Shown piece by piece: positions 33,801 to 63,958 of a DNA stretch of 64,000 bases. The translations under genes were made by a program, and so were the position numbers. Position 1 is the stretch's first letter. Each line of letters starts with the position of its first letter. The notes beneath the pieces are model-generated. The model did not search any database. It had not been told where the DNA came from and saw nothing but the letters and a program-made list of their open reading frames with translations. Origin of the DNA: Bugula neritina (taxonomy: Eukaryota > Animalia > Bryozoa); contig OZ037765.1 in the NCBI GenBank assembly GCA_964035545.1, forward strand, positions 7,574,698 through 7,638,697, written 5' to 3'.

Positions 33801-36800
33801 CCAGATGTTGAAACACATCAAATAGAGAAAGATAATTTAATGAATGCCCTTTATCATCTTCAGCTGACATCCATAAAATTTATTAACAGTAGAGGCACAA
33901 AAAATTCAAATAACTAACAGCTGCAGGGTTGATTGAGGCCAAGGATTTTATTTCTTAAACCTGATTGCTGAATACTATTTGCTCAGGTGATACGTATGAC
34001 TATTATCATTAGCAGTGACTGAATAACTAAGTACACAATACTAGTTAATATAAATCTAATCAACCACTATGACTGCCTTTAAATAGCAAACCAGTTGTAA
34101 TACAGGAGCACAAAGAACACTTATAAAATATTGAAAGTAAAAGTTATTTAAAACAAAAGTAAACAGGTTAATGTGCTTGCTTAACTATTTGATAGAATTC
34201 ACACAAATTTATTGTTTGTTGTACTGATTTCTTGGATGCAAGCCATTCATTACATTATTAAATTCTCACACTAGAATCCTTGGTAATCTGAAACTAAGAA
34301 ATTATAAGTAAAAGTATCTTAAAGTTTACCGTTGCAGCTGGGGGAGTAATGCTCTTGACTTGGGGTACTTGATTTGTGCTGAATTTGATCTGATCACTGG
34401 TGTCGAATATTCTGTCTATGTCGGCAATTCTGTAGGCACAGATGGCTGATGCTCTACAACCAAACACTATTAGCTAGAGCCAGGGATGTGCAATGTTTGT
34501 TGGTAGTTTAATTAATAAAGTATAAAGCAAACACAGTTTAGATTTCGGTATCACTAGATAGTCAACATTAGAAAAACTAGCCCCTAGCCATCTTTGAAAC
34601 TGCAAGTTAATGGTCAGTCCTACACAAAGAAATTTGATAGCCCTAATCTACTACCTGCCAAAAAACTGTGTGCCTGCTGTGTGTGATTTATTTAGGCAAG
34701 GAAACAGCTTTGATATTTTACTGTAAACATGGTGGGCTGTAGTGTAGATTAAAACACACTGTAGATATAGTTAACTGCTTACTTCGGCGAGTTGAAGACA
34801 GCCATGATTATCTTTTCGCCATCAGCACCAGTTACGGATGACAAGTGAGGGGCAGACGTATCGGCTAAATAATAAAAGCAGCCATGTTTATCAAATCAGA
34901 AAATCAACATTATACTTTTATATAGAGATCTTATCAGAGAGACTTACAATACCACCAAATCACTTGGTGACTCCAGCATAAGACTAATTACAAATTAATG
35001 CTAGAATATATTTCAGCTTTGAAGTCGATAATTCACACTATCAGCCTAACCTAACAAGTTTAGGTTTGTAAAGAAAATGTATAAAAAAGTGATTGACAAA
35101 CCTATTTCATTGATATAGACTCCGTAGTAACCAGAGAATTGTTGTGAAAGATATCCGGAAGAAGGTTTTTGCAGCAGAACGCCAGCGTCACCGCACATGA
35201 GTCTGGTTTTAAACAGAGTCGCAAAGAGATATTCAGCAAGTGGGTTTTCATCATCTTTTCCTCGACCCCGATCATTTTTACACACTCGGGCTATTCTCGA
35301 GTAAGCAGTTGGCTCAGAACTTAAGCTAGAGAGAGTCTCAATTGCTGGCTCACTGTAAGTCAGATATACGTAGTCTTCCGTCTCGAAAATGCTGGTAAAT
35401 TCTGTAGCTCTTTCACTGTAGTAATCTACAAGCAACACATATACATGGAACTAGTGGAGAATATAGAGAGCAAACCAGACTTGGTAAAATGAAAGGCCAC
35501 TTTCAAAAAGCAGACATCTTTATTCAGAGTAAATTAGGTGTAATGGTATTTTTATGTGTGTATATCAAGAAAAAAGTTTCAACTTACCTATTTTGAATAA
35601 CTGGTCATTAAAATCTGTTTTCAGGCCAGGCACAACTGCATTAGTGGCAGTGCTGATTGAATTACCCCTGAAAAAGCTCGGCTGCCAAATAGAGGCAGAT
35701 TTGAGTATATGGCTGGCCACGTACACAGTATTTGTGTCTTTTGTAGTCATAACAATCATCTCATTCCAAGGCAGAAGTGGGGAGAGGGATTGAACCAATT
35801 CATTATTCACTTTAGTGTTTGTCAGATTCCATTTTCCCTGCAAGACATAAGAGTCATTAGTGAGTGTCAAATTAACTGACACGCAATTGAGAAACCACCA
35901 GAGTTGCTATAATTTGCTAGAACTAGTAGGGGTGCTTACATCAACCACCCGATATTCTCTGCACTGAGGCTTCTTAGAGCTGCTGGCACAGACGTGGAAC
36001 AAAGAGTCACTTCGTTTGATGACAGATCTTATGTAACTGTTGCAGTCCTGAGCAAACTTTTCAATTTCTCCTTGACAGTATAAAATCTCCTCAGAAAATG
36101 GTGACCATCTTTGTTCACTGTTGACTGTCATGGTTTCCGTGCTTACATTGTACAAATTGCTTCTGAAAAGACCACCACAGGGTAAACATACCTCTATATA
36201 ACTAAATGGTGTGAGATTTCAAAAGGTGTTAAATCCTATCTTCAAAGAGATTTAGCATAACATCAAGGCTTCATCAAGTAACATTACTTCAAAGGGTAAG
36301 CTAGACTGAATCTTTGATACTGCCTTTCAGTGACAATAGCTACTTCAGTGTAACCTAAGGTCTAAACCACACGGTTCATTGTGTAGAATGCCCCAGGCAT
36401 AGACCTAGTCAGGTTAGTACAGCTCAAGCTGTCTACAGATCAGATTTTTGTAAGCTATTTATGTCAAGGACAAAACCATTACCATTTTCATTACCAACCA
36501 TTACCATTAGAACCATTTTATATAATTTACTGTCTAAGCTCACAAGTTGAAAGAATATGTTGAGGCCATCTTCTCAGAGTATAAAAGTAAAGTGAGATTT
36601 GCACTTACTTGGAGCCAACAAGAAAGTAGCTTTCTTCCACATGCAATATCCGTAAATATATGTTATCAGTTGGAGATTGACTGGTCTTGAATACCTTTGC
36701 ATTTGTATCTACAGCACAGAAAACAATAAATATAACTATTTTAATCAACTTTGGCCCTATTCAATGATATTACATGAAAATATGCACAGTATGTATACAA

Positions 36801-50886: not shown

Positions 50887-53800
50887 CTAACTGTCTTGGA
50901 ATCTTTCATAAGGAATTCGATTGGTTATAGAATGAAAAATCTGCGAAAGCTCTGCCATATGGTTTTGTTTGCTTATTTTGTGACTATATGATTGTCTAAA
51001 AAACCCAACTATCAGTAAAATTAAAATGACTGATATAACGATCAGCCAGGCTAGGAGCCCCAGCAAGATGTTGCCATTCGAAGTCTCCAAAGATCCTGAA
51101 GCTGACTGGGAGAGTTGGGCACCCGCCAAAGAGTCTACAAAATATGCCAAAGAGTCTACAAATATCCTAGAAACATAAAAACACTAAACAAAACCATACA
51201 CACACAACCCATGAAATCTCCAGATTAAAGTACAAAAAGTAGACATTATAATATTAGTATTTAACTTCCTTCTACTTGTTTTCTGGGGCTTGTGACCTCA
51301 AAGCTTAGTATGAAATAACCCTAGTGGTGGCATCAAGAGTTCAAACGTAACAAAAATATAGTTTACTGGTCAACACTGCCCAGTAAAAAAGCCTGCATTT
51401 CTAAGAACAATGCAATATTGACCATAGAATAAAGGGGAAAAGGGGATATTTTTCTCTCGTTTACAATTACATAAGTTATCATCTGTAAGCTTAACTTACT
51501 TCTCCTTTAATGATTTAAACAAATTAATTGACCTTAAAAAACCCTTGATGAAGCATTATATACCAACCAGCAGGGGTTAAACAGAGATAGCTTCCAAAGG
51601 AATTAATACAGATCTCAGATTCAGTACAATCATTGAATTGCACAGCACATTCGTCCATATCTACACACGAGTGACCGTCTCTAGCCAGCTCATAGCCGTC
51701 GGAACAAGCACAGTAATAGCCACCATCTAGATTATTGCACCTATCTGCACATCCTCCATTTGCTTCAGAGCATTCATCAATATCTAGAAAATATTGGAAA
51801 ATTGTCAGTAATATATATGCTACTATGAAATAAACAACATTTTAACTGTCAGAGTTCAAAACTATCCTAAAATTAAATTGTCTAATTTTAGTAGAAATCT
51901 GTAAAAATCAAAGAACTTGAATTCACTTTAAAATATTTACATTGAACAAATTTTAAACATGAGATGCACATGAAAATAAAATGTAGTTTGTCACTACTAC
52001 TTTTAGTTTAAAAAGATAACAAAGTTTGAACAATGGCATTCAAAGTTACACAATGTGGTGCACGTCACAATGAACTTGGTGAAAAACACAAAATCATACT
52101 TAGCAACCTAATGATTCTTCTGTGAGTGAGCAGTAATAAAGTGACTAACAAGAAAAATAAAAGATGAATAAGCTTCTTGTATTTCAATTCCAGGTTCTTC
52201 ATTCTCTCAAACAAAAGATTGTGAATGTATATCTACTATTTATCTTGACTCACTGAGAATATACATCATGTAAGCTAAGACAAACAGCATGACAGCAGCC
52301 AATATATAAATACAAAAAGATTTATATATAATTTTCTAATAAATGACTATTACTAGTTGATACTAGGTACATCTACCCGCTTTATCTTCCCTCTAGTACA
52401 GGTGTATGTATTCATAAACCCTCTTCAAGTGTGGCTTGTTGCTACTACTGAAATATTTTCGTCTAGATAGTTTAATCATAACTCTTGAAGCTAGTCAACC
52501 ATGTTTTATCAAATAAATTATTAGGCCTGAAATGATTATTAAAACTTTCCAATGATGTAGCATTTGCAACCAAACACTATAGTATCTCCAGAAACTTATC
52601 CAGTGATTTAGTCAGTCTGTCAACACATGGGAGCATCAGTAGGGCTGAGAGAGAGGAGAGTTGGTAGAGAAATGTTTTGCAGAGACAATTTACCAATGAT
52701 TCTTAAAATATATTGCTGATAACTAAAATCAAATCCAGCTGCTCTGCATTTTATTTCAAATGTATCAAACTTTAAAACCTGTGAAGATATAGGTATGAGT
52801 TGAATGAGAGAACTCTACTCAGAGAAACAAAAATAGCCTGAAATGCACTATTGCTTAGTAACTAGTCAGTACTAGTACTAGATGACAGGGTGTTCAGCTG
52901 ATTGTAAAACTCTCATTATCAATGAATAATACTGCAATAAAGTACTTCTTGACATATCTAGCAAGGGAAATTGATAAATGATTGGAGAAAAACAGAAGGT
53001 AAAGGTATGGTAGAGTAAGGGTGTCAAGAGAGCGTGTGGAAACAGGCTGTGACAGTTATGGCTATCGTAAACTGGTGATTCACAATAGCTCAAAAACATT
53101 GAGCTTCAACACTTTATGCCTGGTTCCAAGAAGTTGCATAAGTTACTGCAGTTGTGAAAAGCCGATCAGCTGTGAGGAGTGCAACTTTCTATAAAGCAGA
53201 AGGAGGAAGTAATCTTACAATATAATCGTGCCTCCGATAAATATATTGGCAAGTTATTGGTTATATGCAAGTAGTGAGTTGAAAAAATGTCCACAATTGG
53301 AATATTTCATAGTCATACTTCAATAGTCACATTTTGGAGAAATTGGGCAGATTAGCTATACAGTTTACAACAGCAAACAGTGATATACAACTCCAAATTT
53401 CACCTGCAACAATCACTCGGAACCAGGCAGAGCACAACGCTCTATGTCACTGAGATTTCGTGAATGACGACCAAAGAATGACCAATTATTAAAATAGTTT
53501 TCCTTGAAATCTAGCACTTGGACAAATGATGCATGATTGGGCAACAGCTGTTACAGTACAGTATTAGCCAATATTGCATTTTGATTGATTTGTTTTGGAG
53601 AAGTTGCCAAAACAAGGTTTTACTATAAACTACAATATTCAGATATTGTTGCAGCTGATGATTAGTAAGAGGCAGTTGAAGATGGAGACTTATAAGTACA
53701 AACTGCAGCTGTACAAGTACTAACTTGCAGAGTCAACACCAGCTGGTGATATCGTTTCTAATCATCCAAGATATAGTATGGTTTAACTTCCACCAAACTC

Positions 53801-56800
53801 CTTGCAAAATGATTATAGGGCAGATGCTTGGTGCTATATTGGTAGGCCTGCATCATTAAACTAACTTGAATGATTTATTTTTCCAACAACTAAAAGTCAA
53901 TTCTGCACAAACACAATGCTGACAGCCCTTTGAACAGCTGCTGAATAGAGTCTAGAATGAGAGATGAAAAGCTAGAAATAGATATTGTAAATGCTTTTTA
54001 TCTGTTATACACTTAGGCATGCAGTTAAAATCAACTTCTTACCTCTAGCTTCAAAAGAGACAAATTCAGATACAAAATAAAGTAAAAACTAAAATAGATA
54101 TATTTTTAAAGCTATAAATATAAATTTTTATATCAAATTAGAAAGATGAGGAAAACATTTGGTCTCATGGCAAAATAATAATGAATGATGTCAACCATTG
54201 ATTAAACAGGCGTTTTATAAACTAAATAGAGTGCCAAGAAACATGGTGTTATTTATAATACAATGTAGATGACTGTAGAGATAGCAATTAGTCAATTTAC
54301 ATTACAACACCAAAACAAATTATTTATATATGTATAATATGAAAACAATTGCATTGAAATAAGCTTTTAAAGATTATTGGCAACTGGTTGAAGTTACAAG
54401 CCACGCCTACAAAATATTATCTATAAGCATATTGCAGATTTCTAGTTACGTGTATATAAATAATATTAAATATTAGAAAGATGACTAAGCTAATGACATT
54501 TTGCTACCAAAATTGCATTTCCAAATGCCACATCAGTTAAACAAACATTATTTTTAACAATTTTCACGTTCAGCTTCATGTTTGATATCTTCCCAGCAAT
54601 ATCCTTTCTGCTAAATGACTGAAAAGTATATTTCATACCCTGGTAGGTTATAAATAGATTCAACTTTTCGATGTCAACTTTCAGCAGTTTAAAACTTGGC
54701 AAGCATAAAGGAAATGTAACTCCATCAGCTTACTACAGATGCTGTAGTTTGATAGTAATGAAAGTCTGAGACTTAATGCAAATCAGGGGTTATAAGAAGC
54801 CTCAGTTTCAAATCCATAACCTACCTATACATTGGTTGGAGACAGTGTCCACAATTTTACCCTCCGGACAACTCAATGTTTCAGCTTGAATTGCAGTCGC
54901 TGTAGCTAAAAGTATAATATTGAAGACTTAGCATGAACACAGCAACAATTTGACAGAACCCAAATATTCCACAAATACATTGCACTGTAATCACCCTAAA
55001 TACCATCTGTTGTAAAAACTACTAAAGAAATAAAAGCATAGAATATGGTAGTTTTTGACCTATTAATACATAACCAAAATGGTAATGCACGGAATATGTT
55101 AGCTGTGTGTTATTTTTACCATGAGCACAGTACAGGTCAACATTATGTAACAACTCAGAAATACCTCACAACCCTAACTACATAACTTAAAGGGCAATAG
55201 GACTTAAGACTAGATTTCTACAACGCAATACCCTAGATATGACACTCCTCGCACCACACCTAGGCTGATGGAATAAAAACTGCGGCAATAGGAAATCAGA
55301 TGTTCATTTATAGAAGGCAGCAAAACTGAGCTTAAAAACAATGCGCATTGTGCTGTCTTCAGTTGTCAGTGCCAACATTTTAACACGTATCTCTTGTGCT
55401 GCCGTCTCCCTGCTGACAAGGGCTAGACAGCTTCCTGTCAACTAATGCCACTCAAACTTGTTTGAGATCAAAATATATGAAGTAAAATTAAAGACAGTCA
55501 GTAGCTGATCATAGTATCAGTTTGTCAATGAGTATTGGGAAGATGTTGGTATACATTGTGTTAGGAGGTGATGGAGCGGCTGTGATAAGAAGTTTTAAGA
55601 ATCTGACTAGTTGGGTTTCAAAATTTCTGCTATAATCTATAGATTTTAATTACAAAAAATTTAATATCCAGCTGTACCAGCAAACACCAGCCACTCGGCT
55701 GAGCATATATAGCCAGAACTTGTTTACGGGTATCAAGTGAGACAAAATAGCAAAACACGTAGTGTATTATTTTTAGCAATTTAGGACCTCAAATACTGAG
55801 AACTTTGAATCAAAGTTGCTAAAGCAGTATTGTAAACTGTATTTCTTTGACATAGAAGCAATATGCTTAGTAGAGCAAATATCTTTAGGTCAGCCAATGA
55901 CTTAGCAGTTAATTTTATCACTCAAAGTTCACAAGACTCTGATATGCACCCTCAGGCATATAGCATGATTACCTTTACTGGATACTAGATTCTGTAAGGG
56001 AACGCAGACATGACTACCCATACTATTCACACAGGTCTCTTGCCCAGAACATTGATGTGTGGCAGCGCGACATTCATCCTGATCGATACATGTCTTGCTG
56101 TCATTGGCTAGAGCATAACCCGGCTGTGTGCACAGGCAGTAGTAACTCCCAGCAGTGTTTATACATTCATCTATACATCCTCCATTATACACTGCACATT
56201 CGTTCAGATCTAAAAGGTCATAGTCAACATTACAGCAGAAGTAAGAGAGGCTAGTAGAAAGCCTAGTGGTAGAGTTCAGCCATTCTATCACATCAATAAT
56301 ATATGACAATTTTGTTACTAGAAAAATGTTTGGTGGAAACTGATAAGTGTGTAAAATTGATTTAAAAATTGGCAGTTGATGCAGTATTATTTATAAACAC
56401 AGCTCTGCTTCCACAGTTGAGAATTTATACTTTAAATTCAGTAGCATTTGTACAGCAGAACCAATGAAGAGAATCTTTCAGTTTGAAATATCCCTGGTAA
56501 TGACCTTAGCAACGAAAGTTGCAACCTTAACCAACCTTCCCTCTCTCCCTTAACTCAAAGCAAAGAAAATATTGATACAAGAACTAATTAAAAGATTTCA
56601 TACAAAGCTATATAAATCAGATCAATTATGAATAATTAAAACAGGGGAATGTATCAAGTTTTTTTCTTTTTATGGCAGATTTTGGGTTATTCCATTGTTA
56701 AATCCTGTATTGTATGTAGAATAAACATTCAGTCCTCCTGTACATATATAACTACTAGAATCAAAATCACAAGAAAGAAGTAGGTTCTAATTTATTTATT

Positions 56801-59800
56801 TCTGCTAAAGCAATGTGAAAATGTATGTTTCTGTGTGACAGCTATTAGGGTTACAAAACCAAAGCTGCATCCTTGTTGGACAATGTTATTCATACTATAT
56901 TATGTGTTTGTAATATGAGTAACATATATCATATTATTTATTTACTAATTAAAATTGTCAATTAGAAAACCTACACCATCCTCCACCCCCACCAACCCAC
57001 TCCATGTAAGAGTATTGGCATCAATACAAACATCAAAGTTTATTGGAGAGGATACAATAATTCACTTCAACCCTCAACACATTAGAATGCAAATGATGAA
57101 CTCTGGATGTTGAGATATTACAATTTTAATATGGCCGCCCAGTCAACAAGCTGCCAGATATCAAGTGATCACATGAGATGCAACGCAGAAGTACTATACT
57201 ATTGTATAGAATATCAACATGTTTTCGTTCAATCAGGAAGCATGTCTATTTTTCCAAACAGCTATCAACATTTTACAAAGTTGCTACCTTTTGAGGCACA
57301 CTGTGTAGACACTCCTGGGAATATTTAGAATAAAACTTGATTAAAATTACCACCTATGATGTATCAGAAATTCATTAACTAAAATTAATTCAGTGGTTAC
57401 AACAACTTAATACCCAAGTGTAATGAATAGTGCTATATGTGACCAAAACATAACAGGTGGAAGTTCATCAATCAATCACCACTATTGCAGATCTTATTCT
57501 ATGCTGAAACCTGTAACAAGTGTTTCCAAACCTTAATCTGTTAATTAGTTGCATTAATTTGCATTTAATAGCCTAAGCTAGATAAGATGCAGTACGGGTG
57601 TTGAGGAAAACGCCTTGTGCTGTTTGACTTTTCTTTCAAGCCCAAAGTCTTGAAAACATTTTGAACTTTTGATCAAACTCATAACTTTAATTGTTCCTGG
57701 AATTACTCATCTCTCGCTCATTTCCACATCCTTTGTATTAGTCACCATATATTCATGTTATAATATGTTAATAGTTCTCCAATAATGATGATAAATACTT
57801 CCTTACAAGCAATTCTTTTGATAAATGTAAGAATAGTTGCAAGCCTACCAATGCAATTTGTCTCAGTCTCATCAATTTTATAGCCGCCAGGGCATGTGCA
57901 GTAGAAACTTCCAATAGTGTTTATGCAAATGTCAGAGCAAGGAGCATTCCCAGCTGTACATTCATCCTCGTCTACAGAAGTGCAGTGTACAGGTAAACTA
58001 ACAACATATAACACCAGGATACTTTATAGTGTATAGTGATATAAGACATGGGCTTATGGCGAATAAATGAAAGAACATTGCATGGTAAAGTCTATCACAA
58101 TCTTACTTAATGCAAGTTTTAATATGCATATTGAATTAATATATCTTTCAATAAATCTATTGACCTTGGTATGCTGGTCCCATTTCTCCTTTTATGCCTT
58201 GGTCTCCTTTAGCACCAGGTGAGCCAAGTTGTCCAGTAGCACCTTGAATGCCAGTTGCTCCTGTAGAGCCAGTAGAACCAACAAGACCAGAGAGTCCAGT
58301 GGCACCCATGTTTCCTGGAGCACCGATTGCGCCCACATCACCTTTGATGGACACACCTGGAGCTCCTTTGGCTCCTGTAAAAGAAGAATATAGTTTACAA
58401 GCATTGCAGGAAAGAGAATGGTCACATTTCCTCAATACTACTTTGCTGTGCATCATATTTCCTTCAGTACTTCAAGTTACACGCTGATATAACTGACGCT
58501 ACTGTAATATATGATCACAAGATGTACACACAACACTGTTTTAAATAATTGGAAAATTATACAATAAATTTGAGCCAAAAATATACAAACGTCCATACAC
58601 TAAATTTCTTAGTTGCCATTGCAAAATTTCTGCTTAAAATGCAACTAAAATGAAAATGATTGTAGCTACACAGTCAATTGGCAACTACTATCTGCACACC
58701 TTTTGAAGTATTCCATTTTTTGACAGCAAAGGAAGTAACTAAAATGATAATTTACACCAAAAAATAAAACCATACTGCTTGTGAAGAATTGATGTATGCA
58801 ATAACAGGTGATCAAAGCTTCTGACATTACCTTTAGCTCCTTTTTCGCCTTCGAGTCCTGGTATTCCAGTTGATCCAGTTGCTCCAATGGAACCCATCAG
58901 TCCTGTAGATCCAGTAGCACCAGTAGAGCCGGTGACTCCTGAAGCTCCAGAAGCACCAACTTTGCCATCTAAACCATCTTTACCATCTATCCCATTAAGC
59001 CCTAAAAATGATTCACGATTCCAAACACTTGTGCATCGATATTATCTACTTATAATTGAGAAGTTAAATATCTGATGTATATTGCACTCTTACCAGGACT
59101 GCCAGGAAAACCATCGTTACCAGGAATTCCTGGTGCACCAGTATCACCTGGTGGACCAGGTTCGCCTGGAATACCTGGAGGCCCAGGTATATTACCACCT
59201 GTACTAGGGGACTCAGTGGGAGAGGTACTTTCTGAAACAGCTGTTGAAGGAAGTGTTACTGATATATATACAGCACAGTCTTCATTTACCAACCCATCCC
59301 CATCAGTATCTATAAATTGAAATGTAAATAACTTTAAACAATTTCAGATGTAAAAACAGAAACGGATAATGAAATATGCTAGATGAATGATATTTTAACA
59401 AGGAAGAAAAGAGAGGCTGTGACATTAAATTAAATTGCTTTTGTCATGGGAGGAACTTTCATCTATGTTTAATGCTTGGGTGTTGTCAGATAATACAAGC
59501 CTTGTGAGTTTGTAAGTTTATTAAATTTAGTAAATGAAGTCATACTGTCACACCACTTTATAACCAACCAACCAATAACAAAAGCCGTAGAAGGAAGATT
59601 ATTTATAACATTGGCACTATAACGTGTAGATACAGGCATATTGGTTTTTTAAAAAAGCCTAACTAAAATCTAATACAATAAAGTTTATCAGTAGATATCA
59701 CAAGCAATAAGTTGCAACAGATTGATTAGGAAAAAAAACAAACAAAAAATATTCCGCACCGGTTTCGGAGTTGTCATCTTCACATATCTCCTCATCAATT

Positions 59801-62800
59801 CTTCCATCACAGTCATTGTCAATTCCATCTCCTAGCTGAGTGGGGCTAACATCACAAGGCTGCGTATACCAAGAAAATTACGGTGTTATGGCAAGATTAT
59901 TATGCAAAAATCACATAAACTTGAAATCAGCTGGTGGGTTGAGGCTCACAGTTGTTAGCAAAATATTTCAAGGCGAAACAAAGTTTTTAACAGGTGCTTT
60001 AAACGAAAACTTAAAAGTGTATATAGAACACAAATGAAAGTCTTCAATCTAGTGTAATGAACGATATAATTCTATATTCTATAAAAAGCAAAAATAAAAA
60101 TACACATTAATATATACTAGATCAGCACAACGCATTCAAAGATAAAACTCAACTAACAAACTTATGCTGCATAGTTAGTTTTATTATCTAGATACAGAGC
60201 TCTTGTGTGTTCACAATATATTATGTTACAGCATGTTGCAATTTTTAACACATGTATCTCCGATCACAAGTTAATGAAATTCTCAACTCCCACATATCCC
60301 ATTTCATACTCTTAGAGACTACAGAGCTAAGATAACAAATTTTGAAAATGGAACTCAATAGAAAACGATAGCATTCCAAAGGCAGTTCTTTTTGTCAGAG
60401 GTCAAGGGGGTATAACCCTCACAACTGTTTGATTGAAAAAGAATCTGAAGTCAAGCTCTCAGTTTACAAATAATGATTCCTGTAGCTCTCCATTACAGCT
60501 ACATCATTGAAGAAGAATCATCCAAATGATGTTAGAACGACCCTTGACCCCTGAGCATGAACTTGAAGAGTAAATAATGAAAAGTTTAATTGTTATGTAC
60601 ATAACCAGTGTACAATACATTGTAAGTTCATTACACTATTGTTATAAACAGGATGTGTGATGAACTTTTACGTGCCTGTGACACATGCACATAACTACTT
60701 GCATTAATTATCAACATGATTTTGATTATGTGACTAAGACAATTATTGCAACTGCCCACATCATTTCGAATTACGCAGCTTCTGTGGTCAAACACAGGGA
60801 TTCAACAATTGACCAGAATGATCAACGCGATGAGAAATATAAAACTATATATTATTTAATATAAATACATCATAACAACAAAAAATATCTAAATTAATTT
60901 GTTGGCTAACGAGAAATGCAGAAATATAGATACCAAAAGAATCATTCTTTTCGTCAAGTTGCATTGCAAAACAAAATGATGAGAAGTTCCCCATCGATAT
61001 ACCAAACTGACATGTGTTTTTATAATAATACTACAAAAAACAGCCAGTTTCATATTCTGTAGAAGGCAAGTCAACATAACACACCGCAAATCATTTACAT
61101 CATTGTGGCCTGTTTATTTTATATATACATTTATATGTCAAATGTGACTACTTTGCTATTGTGTGTATAAGTAAGTGCTTTAAAAAAGCCATAATATTTT
61201 TTCAATCCTATGTTTTTATATAGAAACTACAACTGCTGCACCTCAAACGGCCTCGTCACCAACCTGTGAAACTCTAGCACTGATATTACTGCTAACTGTG
61301 ATAATACTATCCACTTACAGCGTTTATTCTAGCAAGTCTCATGCCAGCAGCAAACCCATAGCTTTCTTTATCGGCATTCCCATACACAAGTACACTGAAG
61401 GTCACCGTGGGGTCAACATGCTGAATGGTGTGTGACCCTCGGCTGATGAGGAATGACGTACCAACATAGTCTGTGCCTGTCACGGTGTACCATGTGCTGA
61501 ACAACTCTGGTAAATACTACAGAAAGACAACGGCTGGTATTTAGTATGTACAGAGTTATTTTTTCATATAAAGCACTAACAAAAGAAAGACAACTCCAAA
61601 ATATCAAATTATTGATATATAAAAGTAATGGAAAATTTCAAGAAAACTGGGCAAATATTGAGCAAAAGCAGGTGAATAAGCTATGCAGTAAGCACAGCAA
61701 AAAAAGGAAAGAGTAATAAAAGCATTTGTTTACCCAGCAGTAATTTCTAAAAATGTATCTAAGAAAAATCTTTAGCTAGTTTTACATGCCATATTTTTAT
61801 TTCAATTTATTATAGCCACTTTGAATTTTTTAAAGCATATCTTGAATTACTTTAAAACCAAAATTCAACTCATCTAATTTTCAAAATTCTATGTCTCATG
61901 ATCAATCTCAAACAACTTTATCATACCTACACTCAATAAATAAGCACAATTCCAGATCTCATTTACAAAAAAAACCTGCAATATTTTTCTCAAACTAAAG
62001 CCTCTCAATGCAATAAAAGCTTTGCAATCCATTCTAGTAGCTAGACAAAAAATGGCGTTTAGATATGACGTTTTTGTTTTCAAAACTTACAGATATAGGT
62101 AAAAGCATTAATTAATCAGTTCCAGGAATGTTGTTTATCTAATTTAAAACATTGAAATTAATGTTTTAATTGATACTCAATTGTTTCTATGCTATACTTT
62201 TGATACATAATATTTTGCCTTTACATCAACACAATCCAATCAAAATTAAAATGATATTAGACTTTATTAGATTTTTTACTTTGACTTTGAAACAAAATCA
62301 ATTTCAATGACTAGTTGTTTTCAAACTAAGTAAAATATGAATCAACTCATAATGAACTAGCAGATTGAAAAGGGAATTGCAAATAGTGCTAGACTCATTT
62401 ATTCTCATAAACAGACCATAAATTTAGAATTGCAGAATAAAAATTCATCTAGTTATTAACTTCAGAGGTTTTTTATGTGCTAAAAATACCAATGCATGAT
62501 TCACTCTGAACAGTACTCAACAGCAATGACTATAAACATAAATAATATTGCATATTTATAACTATTGTGTTATAAATAGATTATGATAGATAGTCCTACA
62601 ATCAGCTGTAATAAAGTAGCTTGTAATTATACAGTATTGCCATGGCTTCCTGCCACATCACAATTGTCCTAAACACACCACACCTTATCTAAAGTGAGTA
62701 ACATATTGTTACTGTCAAGTAATTGCACCACCGGGGAATCAAACCTCACACTTCTAACTTAACCAAGTGACTACCCATTACACTACGGGAGAGGGGGGGG

Positions 62801-63958
62801 GTTGAAATTTCAACCCAACAGCTACATTGCACACACATACCCTGTTATATATAACTTATATATAACACACTTAATATAATAATAACACTGCAAATGTTGC
62901 TAGTGAGTTAGAACTCGTGCTTGTTATTATGTTGAAAACGTTAGCAAGCCGTGTTATGTTTGGTCTAAGAGAGAACCAATAGTATACTGCATATCAGAAG
63001 CGAGTAGCCAGCTAGAGTAGAGGTTATACAGCACCTGGCCATCAAAGAGAAGCCCGCTGACTTGATCAGCTGGGCACACCATCACCATGTAGTCTTCAGT
63101 GTCAAAGTTACTTGGATCTTCTCCTGTAGAGCCGGCGGTAGAGAATGTGTACGCGTTAGCCCACTGTTCTACTGCAGGCAATATAATCATGGTAGGGTCC
63201 CCTACCTCTGATACACTTCGCTGACTCTGAGAAATCTACAGTCATGTGTTGTGGAATTGTGGCTAGCCATAGATATGAAAGTATAACCAGCCGCAGCACG
63301 TTTGAACCCCCGCCCCCAAACATACATCTTAGCACCAGTACCCGAGAATATTTTAACAATGGCTACCTTGATTTAATTAGAATAATGACAAGTTTCGTAC
63401 TTTTTGTCAAAGAATTTGAAAGTAAATGACTGAAACACATGGACCATGAAATCACAAATGCAGTGGCAAATGATCATTATTGGAATAAACATGTAAATGT
63501 CAAGGTTTTTCAAGCAACCTCAGTGCAGATGTACCAGAGTTGCCAAAGGATATCAATATATTTGAAACCAGATCATTTTAATCAAAAGGATAATAGAATC
63601 TTTATAGTTTGATTCAGCTTTCTTGAAAAATATTCAAATTTTAGCATATCATTTACATGATGAGCCGTCGAAGGTGTAAGAAGGGGAAACTCATCAAACA
63701 AAAAATAGTACATCAAACAGAACTGCCAGTATTGTATTTCGATTCATACAAAAGCACTAAGAATAGCAGAAAGTGTTCCTACTTATACCTGTGTTACAAG
63801 TATTGGTTTTGTAGACGAAATAGACAAGTGCTCGTCTGAAGGTATAATGTAGGTCTTGGCTTCACCCGCATTCAGGTAAAATGTAGCTTTAGTAATTATC
63901 ACCACCATTGTGTCATTCTCAGCAGCCATTATGTTGAAATAGTCACCAGTAGTTCTGC
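50887..63958 (-). CDS. 5'-partial type I membrane protein: IgGFc-binding domain + DNDCDG/DxDGDG acidic motif pair + Ser/Thr stalk + collagen triple helix + 5 Ca-EGF units + TM + short tail (12 exons visible, about 730 aa)
   Basis: Exons on the minus strand: 63958-63789, 63235-63035, 61516-61319, 59859-59760, 59309-59094, 59001-58831, 58374-58165, 57971-57849, 56209-55973, 54905-54825, 51783-51568, 51155 (or 51134)-50887. All are GT-AG and phase-compatible. IgGFc-binding motifs: GDYFNIMAAENDT, LNAGE, STKPILVTQ, GDPTMIILPAVEQW, VYGNADKESYGFAAG. GDGIDNDCDGRIDEEIC. About 51 Gly-X-Y triplets. D-x-D/N-E-C EGF starts. TM: ILLGLLAWLIVISVILILLIVGFF. The gene continues beyond the window end. Confidence 0.9.
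51125..51165. repeat. 21/20-bp tandem duplication over the last splice acceptor
   Basis: gccaaagagtctacaaaatat (51125-51145) followed by gccaaagagtctacaaatat (51146-51165). Confidence 0.95.
62724..62790 (-). mobile_element. tRNA-derived SINE head / tRNA pseudogene
   Basis: Minus strand tcccgtagtgtaatgggtagtcac (A-box-like) ... gaggtttgattccccggtggtgca (B-box/T-arm-like). The acceptor and anticodon stems do not pair, so it is not a functional tRNA. Confidence 0.55.

What the first reader, a model, noticed from the sequence alone, without database searches (positions are those of the whole stretch)
50887..63958. Unusual receptor architecture: IgGFc-binding head on a collagen stalk with Ca-EGF repeats, TM and endocytic tail
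Seen: one continuous spliced frame joins an IgGFc-binding (FCGBP N-terminal type) domain, an acidic Cys/Asp motif pair, a Ser/Thr linker, about 51 Gly-X-Y triplets, five EGF units, a C-terminal TM and a tail containing YERF. Known: most membrane collagens (MACITs, class A scavenger receptors) are type II; collagen-stalked recognition heads (C1q, collectins, ficolins) trimerise for avidity; YxxPhi motifs recruit AP-2. Inference: this is a type I, trimeric, endocytic recognition or mucus-associated receptor. I do not recognise the architecture as a described family.
Basis: partly seen in the sequence, partly recalled or inferred. Interest (0 to 1): 0.8.

Follow-up and report, generated by a model that had tools for sequence, protein, structure and literature searches.

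The report
Tail-anchored collagen-stalked surface protein gene
This is a real, transcribed gene of a marine invertebrate (probably a bryozoan) for a cell-surface protein with two "IgGFc-binding-type" head domains on a collagen stalk, five EGF units and a C-terminal membrane anchor; the layout is shared with uncharacterised Lingula proteins and is anchored the opposite way round to all described membrane collagens, but its ligand and function are unknown.

Summary
On the minus strand, 22 GT..AG exons form one open frame of 1498 codons (the first, signal-peptide exon is only inferred). The gene runs from window 50887 to about 6.5 kb beyond the window edge. RNA-Seq contigs from a ~95% identical strain show spliced joints linking IgGFc exons, Cys/Asp motif and all three collagen exons. 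The collagen→EGF→TM joins rest on phase, a colinear paralogue and homologues. That paralogue (contig C2) has an identical stalk: 50 Gly-X-Y triplets plus one G-x-S-[VI]-K break. Four Lingula anatina "uncharacterized" proteins share the layout with 53 triplets. So the architecture is conserved but undescribed; Luo 2015 noted only Lingula "EGF collagens".

Type I topology and trimerisation are likely. "IgGFc-binding" is a misnomer, as FCGBP's IgG binding was not reproduced and the domain's function is unknown. YERF is not conserved in the paralogue or Lingula, so the endocytic reading is weak. Nothing mucin-like is present.

Verdict: a new variant of the membrane-collagen kind, of moderate interest. 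An earlier scan note reports another type I membrane collagen in this genome.

The parts
63789..63958 (-). Exon D2e, the middle of the second PF17517 (IgGFc_binding-type) domain. The upstream exons lie outside the window: D2d-D2a at L003 350-2246, the first domain D1e-D1a at L003 2916-5839, and the putative signal-peptide exon at L003 6638-6740.
   Evidence: Pfam PF17517 profile positions 147-193. The RNA contig's loose end joins 63789 to 63235. Upstream exons.
63035..63235 (-). Exon D2f, PF17517 domain (ISQSQRSVSEVGDPTM...)
   Evidence: Pfam. RNA joint 61516<-63035 with GT..AG ends, absent from the DNA run.
61319..61516 (-). Exon D2g, the end of the second PF17517 domain (...YGNADKESYGF...)
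   Evidence: RNA joints on both sides. 70% identical to the paralogue exon.
59760..59859 (-). Exon D2h, first half of the Cys/Asp motif (GDGIDNDCDGRIDEEIC)
   Evidence: PF11617 at E 2e-4, below the cut-off. RNA joints 59859<-61319 and 59309<-59760.
59094..59309 (-). Exon D2i: second half of the Cys/Asp motif (DTDGDGLVNEDC), the Ser/Thr linker, and the first 10 Gly-X-Y triplets (Pro-rich at Y)
   Evidence: Pfam Collagen. A single 416-nt RNA contig spans this exon and the next (record 3).
58831..59001 (-). Collagen exon 2, 19 triplets
   Evidence: RNA joints on both sides.
58165..58374 (-). Collagen exon 3: 2 triplets, the GVSIK interruption, then 19 triplets
   Evidence: Pfam Collagen at 38.8 bits. 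RNA joint to collagen exon 2. The paralogue has the same break and the same length.
57849..57971 (-). Exon EGF1 (cbEGF)
   Evidence: EGF_CA at 39.8 bits. Covered by an RNA contig, but no joint to the collagen exon was shown. Phase 1 with GT..AG.
55973..56209 (-). Exon with EGF2 (cbEGF) and the first four Cys of EGF3
   Evidence: EGF_CA at 51.6 bits in two stretches.
54825..54905 (-). Small exon completing EGF3 (...SCPEGKIVDTVSNQC)
   Evidence: Phase 1 in and out with GT..AG. No RNA or homologue support; this is the weakest exon of the model.
51568..51783 (-). Exon with EGF4 (cbEGF) and the truncated 4-Cys EGF5
   Evidence: EGF_CA. 54% identical to the paralogue exon. 94% identical between strains against 90% for the introns.
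50887..51155 (-). Last exon: juxtamembrane Ser-rich linker, TM helix (ILLGLLAWLIVISVILILLIVGFF), 38-aa cytoplasmic tail containing YERF, and the TAG stop. An alternative in-phase acceptor at 51134 is created by a 17-bp duplication.
   Evidence: The only relative in this genome is the C2 paralogue. 95.5% identical between strains.

Best explanation
This is one gene of about 19.7 kb and 22 exons. It encodes a protein of about 1,500 aa anchored in the plasma membrane by a single C-terminal TM helix, with the N-terminus outside. From the far end inwards, each chain carries two PF17517 beta-sandwich domains, each followed by an acidic Cys/Asp motif (probably Ca-binding). Then come a short Ser/Thr linker, a 155-residue collagen segment, about five Ca-binding EGF units, the TM helix and a short unconserved tail. 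The collagen segment most likely winds three chains into a rod of about 44 nm (my estimate from 0.286 nm per residue). Six head domains would then stand roughly 60 nm above the membrane on a semi-rigid collagen/cbEGF stalk. I read it as a trimeric tether or adhesion/recognition molecule of the cell surface or apical matrix, whose tail does little more than anchor it. It belongs to a family shared by this (probably bryozoan) genome and the brachiopod Lingula. Shown here: gene structure, transcription and splicing of the head-to-collagen part, the domain content, and conservation of the architecture and stalk length. Inferred: the signal peptide and topology, trimerisation, Ca binding, and the binding or tethering function.
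For: Open exon translations and a closed frame of 4494 nt with 21 GT..AG introns. Spliced RNA joints D2e->D2f->D2g->D2h->D2i->Col2->Col3, absent from the DNA control run. Pfam hits per exon. The paralogue on C2 has the same exon order and an identical triplet layout at about 42-53% identity in the collagen-segment alignments. Lingula proteins P0006, P0154, P0155 and P0156 have a clear signal peptide, three IgGFc/Cys-Asp units, TSP1, exactly 53 triplets directly abutting cbEGF, a truncated last EGF, TM and a short tail. Between strains, the three changes in Gly codons are all synonymous and the seven non-synonymous changes within the triple-helix region all fall at X or Y positions. Exons are more conserved than introns. 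The AF2 model of the head exon is a confident all-beta sandwich stack.
Against: There is no RNA evidence for the first exon or for the collagen->EGF1, EGF->EGF and EGF5->TM joins. The putative signal peptide has an acidic n-region, and the paralogue's better signal-peptide ORF lacks an in-phase GT donor. There is no trimerisation domain such as a coiled coil next to the collagen, and imino-acid content is low outside the first 10 triplets. No ligand is known for PF17517, and the fold search is non-specific. The tails are unconserved, so a signalling or sorting role cannot be read from them.
Confidence: 0.6

Rival explanations
1. One reading: an endocytic pattern-recognition or scavenger-type receptor. 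The trimeric heads bind microbial or mucus ligands, and the YERF motif recruits AP-2 for uptake.
For: The layout of heads on a collagen stalk attached to a membrane is functionally analogous to class A scavenger receptors. The window tail has YERF and the paralogue tail has YTDL(L).
Against: The two Tyr motifs are at non-homologous positions: YERF aligns to QSDR and YTDL aligns to MAEL. The Lingula tails have none. One YxxPhi in a tail of this length is expected by chance about 0.3 times (my estimate). The head's name does not reflect a proven binding activity.
Confidence: 0.12
2. A membrane-bound precursor or organiser of an apical extracellular matrix or skeleton (cuticle or zooecium). The ectodomain would be shed or built into the matrix, like the 'EGF-domain collagens' found in the Lingula shell proteome.
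For: Lingula shell-matrix proteomes are dominated by EGF, collagen and TSP_1 domains, and Luo 2015 defined a Lingula collagen group with EGF_CA and FXa_inhibition domains. That is the C-terminal module of the Lingula homologues. Both phyla secrete an exoskeleton from epithelium (general knowledge).
Against: No dibasic or furin-type site lies between EGF5 and the TM in the window gene, the paralogue or Lingula. None of the Lingula accessions could be traced to a shell proteome.
Confidence: 0.22
3. Artefact: two or more adjacent genes (an IgGFc gene and a collagen-EGF-TM gene) read through by eye.
For: The collagen->EGF and EGF->TM joins lack direct RNA evidence. The Watersipora relatives stop right after the third IgGFc domain.
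Against: RNA joints cross from the IgGFc domain into the collagen exons. There is no stop codon and no signal peptide or start between the parts, and the phases are compatible. The order is identical in a diverged paralogue and in Lingula RefSeq models.
Confidence: 0.04

Closest known systems
Lingula anatina uncharacterised proteins LOC106163541 (XP_013396611.1) and LOC106153735 (XP_013383271.1), plus UniParc relatives (P0006, P0156)
   Same: Signal peptide; tandem PF17517 domains each followed by the GDGxDNDCDG...DxDGDG..EDC motif; a single collagen segment of almost the same length (159 against 155 residues) that runs straight into cbEGF; a truncated 4-Cys last EGF; TM; a short tail.
   Different: Lingula has three heads rather than two. 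It has 1 to about 17 TSP1 repeats in place of the Ser/Thr linker, an uninterrupted and more Pro-rich helix, three EGFs rather than five, a longer helical-looking juxtamembrane linker, and an unrelated tail. Identity in the heads is only about 40%.
Lingula 'shell-associated collagens with an EGF domain' (Luo et al. 2015, PMC4595640)
   Same: The combination of collagen with EGF, EGF_CA and FXa_inhibition domains, without a COLFI domain, in a lophophorate.
   Different: That description has no PF17517 head and no TM. Whether those shell proteins are the same genes as the Lingula homologues found here was not determined.
MACIT collagens (XIII, XVII, XXIII, XXV; COL-99), colmedins, ectodysplasin A and class A scavenger receptors
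   Same: Single-pass membrane proteins with a collagenous, presumably trimeric ectodomain, some with globular binding heads at the distal end.
   Different: All of those are type II, with an N-terminal anchor (PMC7848082). Here the anchor is C-terminal. There is no coiled coil, SRCR, CTLD, olfactomedin or TNF domain, and no furin shedding site.
Human FCGBP
   Same: Shares the PF17517 (N1) domain.
   Different: FCGBP is a secreted mucus protein built of 13 VWD assemblies. The present gene has none. FCGBP's N1 domain has no known function and is missing in mouse (PMC11796319).
Defence collagens (C1q, collectins, ficolins)
   Same: Globular heads multiplied by a collagen stalk, which gives avidity.
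   Different: Those are secreted, their heads are C-terminal (gC1q, CTLD, fibrinogen-like), and they have no EGF rod or TM.

Membership tests
PF17517 (IgGFc_binding) domain-containing proteins | Pfam match above the gathering score (25.6 bits) | tested here: met
   D1b exon 147.3 bits and D2d exon 50 bits. The other D2 exons score 17-24 bits each but lie at consecutive profile positions. The genome search gave 146.5 bits at this locus.
FCGBP orthologue (mucus protein) | Repeated VWD/C8/TIL assemblies with GDPH autocleavage sites | tested here: not met
   No VWD, C8 or TIL hit in any exon. The domain order is head, collagen, EGF, TM.
FCGBP orthologue (mucus protein) | Binds IgG Fc | not testable with these tools
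   Invertebrates lack IgG (general knowledge), and even for human FCGBP the binding was not reproduced (PMC11796319).
Lingula IgGFc-collagen-EGF-TM family | N-terminal signal peptide directly before the first PF17517 domain | tested here: inconclusive
   A candidate exon at L003 6740-6638 has a phase-1 GT donor that fits D1a, but there is no RNA evidence and its n-region is atypical. Lingula has a clear signal peptide.
Lingula IgGFc-collagen-EGF-TM family | Tandem PF17517 domains, each followed by a Cys/Asp motif | tested here: met
   Two units here and three in Lingula.
Lingula IgGFc-collagen-EGF-TM family | TSP1 repeat(s) between the heads and the collagen | tested here: not met
   A Ser/Thr linker sits there instead. 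The family assignment is therefore at the level of architecture, not strict orthology.
Lingula IgGFc-collagen-EGF-TM family | One collagen segment of about 53 triplets abutting cbEGF, a truncated last EGF, a C-terminal TM and a short tail | tested here: met
   50 triplets plus a 5-residue break, 155 residues in all, against 159 in Lingula. The junction reads GPAYQ-D-EDEC against GPPGNKEVDEC.
MACIT / type II membrane collagens | N-terminal cytoplasmic domain and signal-anchor TM (type II) | tested here: not met
   The only strong hydrophobic segment is in the last exon, 38 aa before the stop.
MACIT / type II membrane collagens | Juxtamembrane coiled-coil nucleation and a furin shedding site | tested here: not met
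   Reading the exon translations by eye (no prediction program was run), I saw no dibasic motif and no obvious heptad region next to the collagen or the TM.
Class A scavenger receptors | Type II orientation, an alpha-helical coiled coil, and an SRCR or C-type lectin head | tested here: not met
   No such Pfam hits, and the orientation is opposite.
Triple-helical (trimeric) collagenous protein | Formation of a protease-resistant triple helix | not testable with these tools
   Indirect evidence only: an unbroken Gly register apart from one conserved break, identical length in the paralogues, and Gly codons that change only synonymously.

The most novel reading that the evidence does not exclude
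Bryozoans and brachiopods share an ancient, undescribed class of type I (tail-anchored) trimeric membrane collagens. Their PF17517 heads would be the real ligand-binding unit. That would give the first functional context for the orphan 'IgGFc-binding' domain, for example glycan or matrix recognition at the skeleton-secreting or mucosal epithelium. It would also be a membrane-collagen topology that must fold its helix differently from all known membrane collagens.
Probability: 0.3. Interest if true: 0.7.

Novelty: new variant of a known kind. Interest (0 to 1): 0.45.

Why it matters
All membrane collagens and collagenous receptors described so far are type II. A conserved family anchored by its C-terminus raises the question of how and where its triple helix nucleates. 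It also offers a tractable setting (two paralogues here, four or more in Lingula) for finding out what the widespread but functionally orphan PF17517 domain binds. It may also link to the EGF-bearing collagens reported in lophophorate skeleton formation. Against this, it is built from common extracellular modules by domain shuffling, no function has been demonstrated, and homologous models already sit unannotated in public databases.

Tried and rejected
1. In one search I scanned the Cys/Asp exon in the wrong frame; I redid it.
2. My first acceptor for exon D2f (63205) was wrong; the RNA places it at 63235.
3. Shared collagen-EGF-TM cassette in this genome: the TM/tail exon has only the C2 paralogue as a relative. 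The two best extra EGF-exon hits are fibrillin-like cbEGF arrays without collagen. I therefore found no evidence of a cassette at those loci, and I could not locate the other type I collagen noted by the scan.
4. The word search with the TM exon, meant to find transcript fragments crossing the EGF5/TM junction, found only unspliced genomic contigs of a related strain.
5. Fold and sequence searches of the head against solved structures gave nothing specific. The best match is Z 9.9 over 95 residues, and the profile search found no PDB hit. The Cys/Asp motif also had no meaningful PDB hit.
6. Literature searches for the architecture, for bryozoan IgGFc proteins and for the Lingula accessions found nothing. 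The supplement of the 2026 proteome paper is not held.
7. Comparing the regions upstream of D1a between the two paralogues showed no conserved first exon.
Whole-protein InterProScan-style scans, architecture queries with the spliced model and trimer prediction were therefore left out.
Full report
WHAT IS THERE

The window is G000:C1:7574698-7638697 of a 216-Mb, AT-rich (about 32% GC) eukaryotic genome. Pfam, run exon by exon by reference, gives:
- IgGFc_binding (PF17517) at consecutive profile positions;
- Collagen, in three exons;
- EGF_CA, FXa_inhibition and cEGF, in four exons.

The last exon holds a 24-residue hydrophobic helix and a 38-aa tail ending PYERFQDS-stop.

The first IgGFc exon in the window starts at profile position 147 of 297. 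I therefore fetched the next 20 kb of the contig (L003 position x = window 63800+x). That region contains:
- the four missing 5' exons of this domain (D2a-D2d);
- upstream of them, a complete first PF17517 domain (D1a-D1d, including one 832-nt exon scoring 147 bits) with its own Cys/Asp motif (D1e);
- about 0.8 kb further up, an ATG-initiated hydrophobic ORF whose phase-1 GT donor fits the D1a acceptor.

Beyond that lie a Gypsy-type LTR element and an unrelated plus-strand gene.

A script confirmed that all 21 introns are GT..AG, that every phase matches, and that the frame closes at 4494 nt, which is 1498 codons. Each exon translation is open. So the gene has two heads, not one, and spans about 19.7 kb, of which 6.5 kb lies outside the window.

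IS IT ONE TRANSCRIPT?

One RNA-Seq library (X1, coded; labelled a symbiont metagenome) holds about 11% of the words of the 6-kb stretch 57740-63739. The probable source DNA run (X2) holds all of them.

I laid both runs on that stretch. X1 contigs are 93-96% identical, so they come from another strain or a sibling species. They show joints with CT..AC ends on the plus strand (GT..AG on the gene strand) that are absent from X2:
- 61516<-63035;
- 59859<-61319;
- 59309<-59760 (the aligner shifted this one by a synonymous SNP);
- 59001<-59094;
- 58374<-58831.

A loose end at 63237 also reads into the end of exon D2e. This moved my D2f acceptor to 63235 and adds ISQSQRSVSE, which matches IVQSQQSTNE of domain 1. 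One 416-nt contig covers the linker/collagen-1 exon and collagen exon 2.

The joins collagen-3->EGF1, EGF->EGF and EGF5->TM were not shown, because read laying is capped at one call of 6 kb. They rest on phase, splice sites and homology. A word search with the TM exon found only unspliced genomic contigs of the ~95% strain. Those contigs do show exons at 94-95.5% identity against 87-91% for introns and the 3' flank.

CONSERVATION

A genome-wide PF17517 search pointed to a paralogue on contig C2. I ran tblastn with each exon peptide separately against 30 kb of that region. It shows the same parts in the same order with nearly the same exon structure, at 29-79% identity:
- D1, including the big exon;
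- Cys/Asp motif;
- D2 in small exons;
- Cys/Asp motif in two exons;
- linker and three collagen exons;
- five EGF units;
- TM and tail.

The triplet layout of the paralogue's collagen is identical to the window gene's: 10 + 19 + 2 triplets, a G-x-S-[VI]-K break, then 19 triplets. The collagen-segment alignments are only about 42-53% identical.

An exhaustive HMMER search with the large head exon found 6115 relatives, none above 58% identity. I screened the best 150 for Gly-X-Y runs, cbEGF signatures and hydrophobic ends. This singled out P0006, P0009 and P0096.

A word search and cluster look-ups show these are Lingula anatina proteins, all labelled "uncharacterized" or "collagen alpha-2(I) chain-like" (XP_013396611.1, XP_013383271.1, XP_013416786.1, XP_023933091.1). 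Four of them have this layout:
- a clear signal peptide;
- three PF17517 + Cys/Asp units;
- TSP1 repeats;
- exactly 53 uninterrupted triplets running straight into cbEGF;
- a truncated 4-Cys last EGF;
- a TM and a 36-37-aa tail.

The stalk length, 159 against 155 residues, is thus kept between two phyla.

Between strains, the three substitutions in Gly codons are synonymous. The seven non-synonymous changes within the triple-helix region are all at X or Y positions (chance about 0.06, so only suggestive).

WHAT THE PARTS SAY ABOUT FUNCTION

Head. The name is misleading. [quoted passage not shown] The N1 domain (PF17517 type) has unknown function, is absent from mouse FCGBP, and also occurs in gliding bacteria.

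I made an AlphaFold2 model of the single-exon part of head 1, built on a 41-sequence alignment. It is confident (pLDDT 85.6, pTM 0.85) and consists of stacked beta-sandwiches. Foldseek found nothing at E<=0.001. VIA-align gave only generic sandwich matches: Z 9.9 over 95 residues to TM1070, then GH32, CBM, CUB and MG-like domains at Z<=7.7. A profile search of PDB sequences found nothing. So the fold fits a binding module but does not identify a ligand.

Cys/Asp motif. It matches PF11617 below threshold and has DxDxDG-like loops. Ca binding is therefore an inference, and one search gave no useful PDB hit.

Stalk. It has 50 triplets, with Pro at Y in 12 and Thr at Y in 12. The first ten triplets are Pro-rich and the rest are Ala/Ser/Thr-rich. 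There is no adjacent coiled coil.

Tail. It has no known domain. YERF aligns to QSDR in the paralogue. The paralogue's own YTDL(L) aligns to MAEL here. The Lingula tails have no YxxPhi outside the membrane-adjacent YKxx. I therefore give the endocytic reading low weight.

No VWD or mucin domain is present, so "mucus-associated" has no basis. No dibasic site lies near the membrane, so shedding is not indicated either.

COMPARISON WITH WHAT IS KNOWN

The review PMC7848082 states that MACITs, ectodysplasin A, colmedins and class A scavenger receptors are all type II. The present family is anchored at the C-terminus.

Luo et al. 2015 (PMC4595640) and a 2026 proteome paper (PMC13425148) describe Lingula shell collagens with EGF, EGF_CA, FXa_inhibition and TSP_1 domains. 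That matches the C-terminal module of the Lingula homologues. Neither paper mentions a PF17517 head or a TM, and I could not trace the accessions to any paper.

Bryozoan (Watersipora) relatives in the database are a signal peptide plus three head units, and they end at the position of our D2g/D2h exon boundary. They could be a secreted form or truncated models.

I did not verify that locus. The TM/tail exon of the present gene has no relative other than the C2 paralogue.

VERDICT

The architecture is real, expressed, duplicated here and conserved in a brachiopod. I found no description of it in the searchable literature, although it is not new to the databases.

Topology and trimerisation are likely but not shown. 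The recognition, endocytic and mucus functions are not supported by anything beyond analogy. I class it as a new variant of the membrane-collagen or collagen-stalked surface-protein kind, with interest 0.45.

LIMITS

All searches were run exon by exon by reference, or with natural database proteins.

Noticed in passing
window 51125-51164 (minus strand): A 17-bp tandem duplication (TTTGTAGACTCTTTGGC x2) sits at the acceptor of the TM exon. It creates two in-phase acceptors, 51155 and 51134, which differ by 7 aa (SLAYFVD). The duplication is also present in the ~95% identical strain (P0269, L012, L013).
   Followed up: partly
L003 1130-1560 (about window 64930-65360, beyond the window edge): An array of about 20-bp tandem repeats (CACAGTATCACTATTGTACT-like) fills most of the intron between exons D2b and D2c.
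   Followed up: no
L003 7140-9650: A Gypsy-type LTR retrotransposon lies just upstream of the gene's putative first exon. It has a 667-aa RT/RNaseH/integrase ORF on the plus strand, flanked by repeated LTR segments. The scan has already noted it (s1-478864).
   Followed up: no
L005 2300-2503 (G000:C2:11703299-11703502): The C2 paralogue has a coding-looking tandem repeat (PSTIPVQVGVAT, several copies) right after its D1a exon. Whether it is exonic is unknown.
   Followed up: no
L004 5150-8370 (+): A plus-strand gene with repeated PGPGxYD motifs (like sperm-tail PG-rich repeat proteins). This is the next gene upstream.
   Followed up: no
window 35907-36155 (-): An ORF containing ...DCNSYIRSV...C...KPQC..., which resembles an exon of a Sema domain. 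It may be the next gene on the 3' side.
   Followed up: no
P0159, P0160 (Watersipora subatra XP_067949903.1, XP_067948374.1): These bryozoan proteins, a signal peptide plus three IgGFc/Cys-Asp units, end exactly where the present gene has an exon boundary. They may be truncated gene models that hide a similar C-terminal module.
   Followed up: partly
L012, L013 (JGI samples 3300002729, 3300003318): Host genomic DNA of a ~91% identical strain (95% in exons) sits in public 'metagenome' assemblies, with exons called there as prokaryote-style genes.
   Followed up: partly
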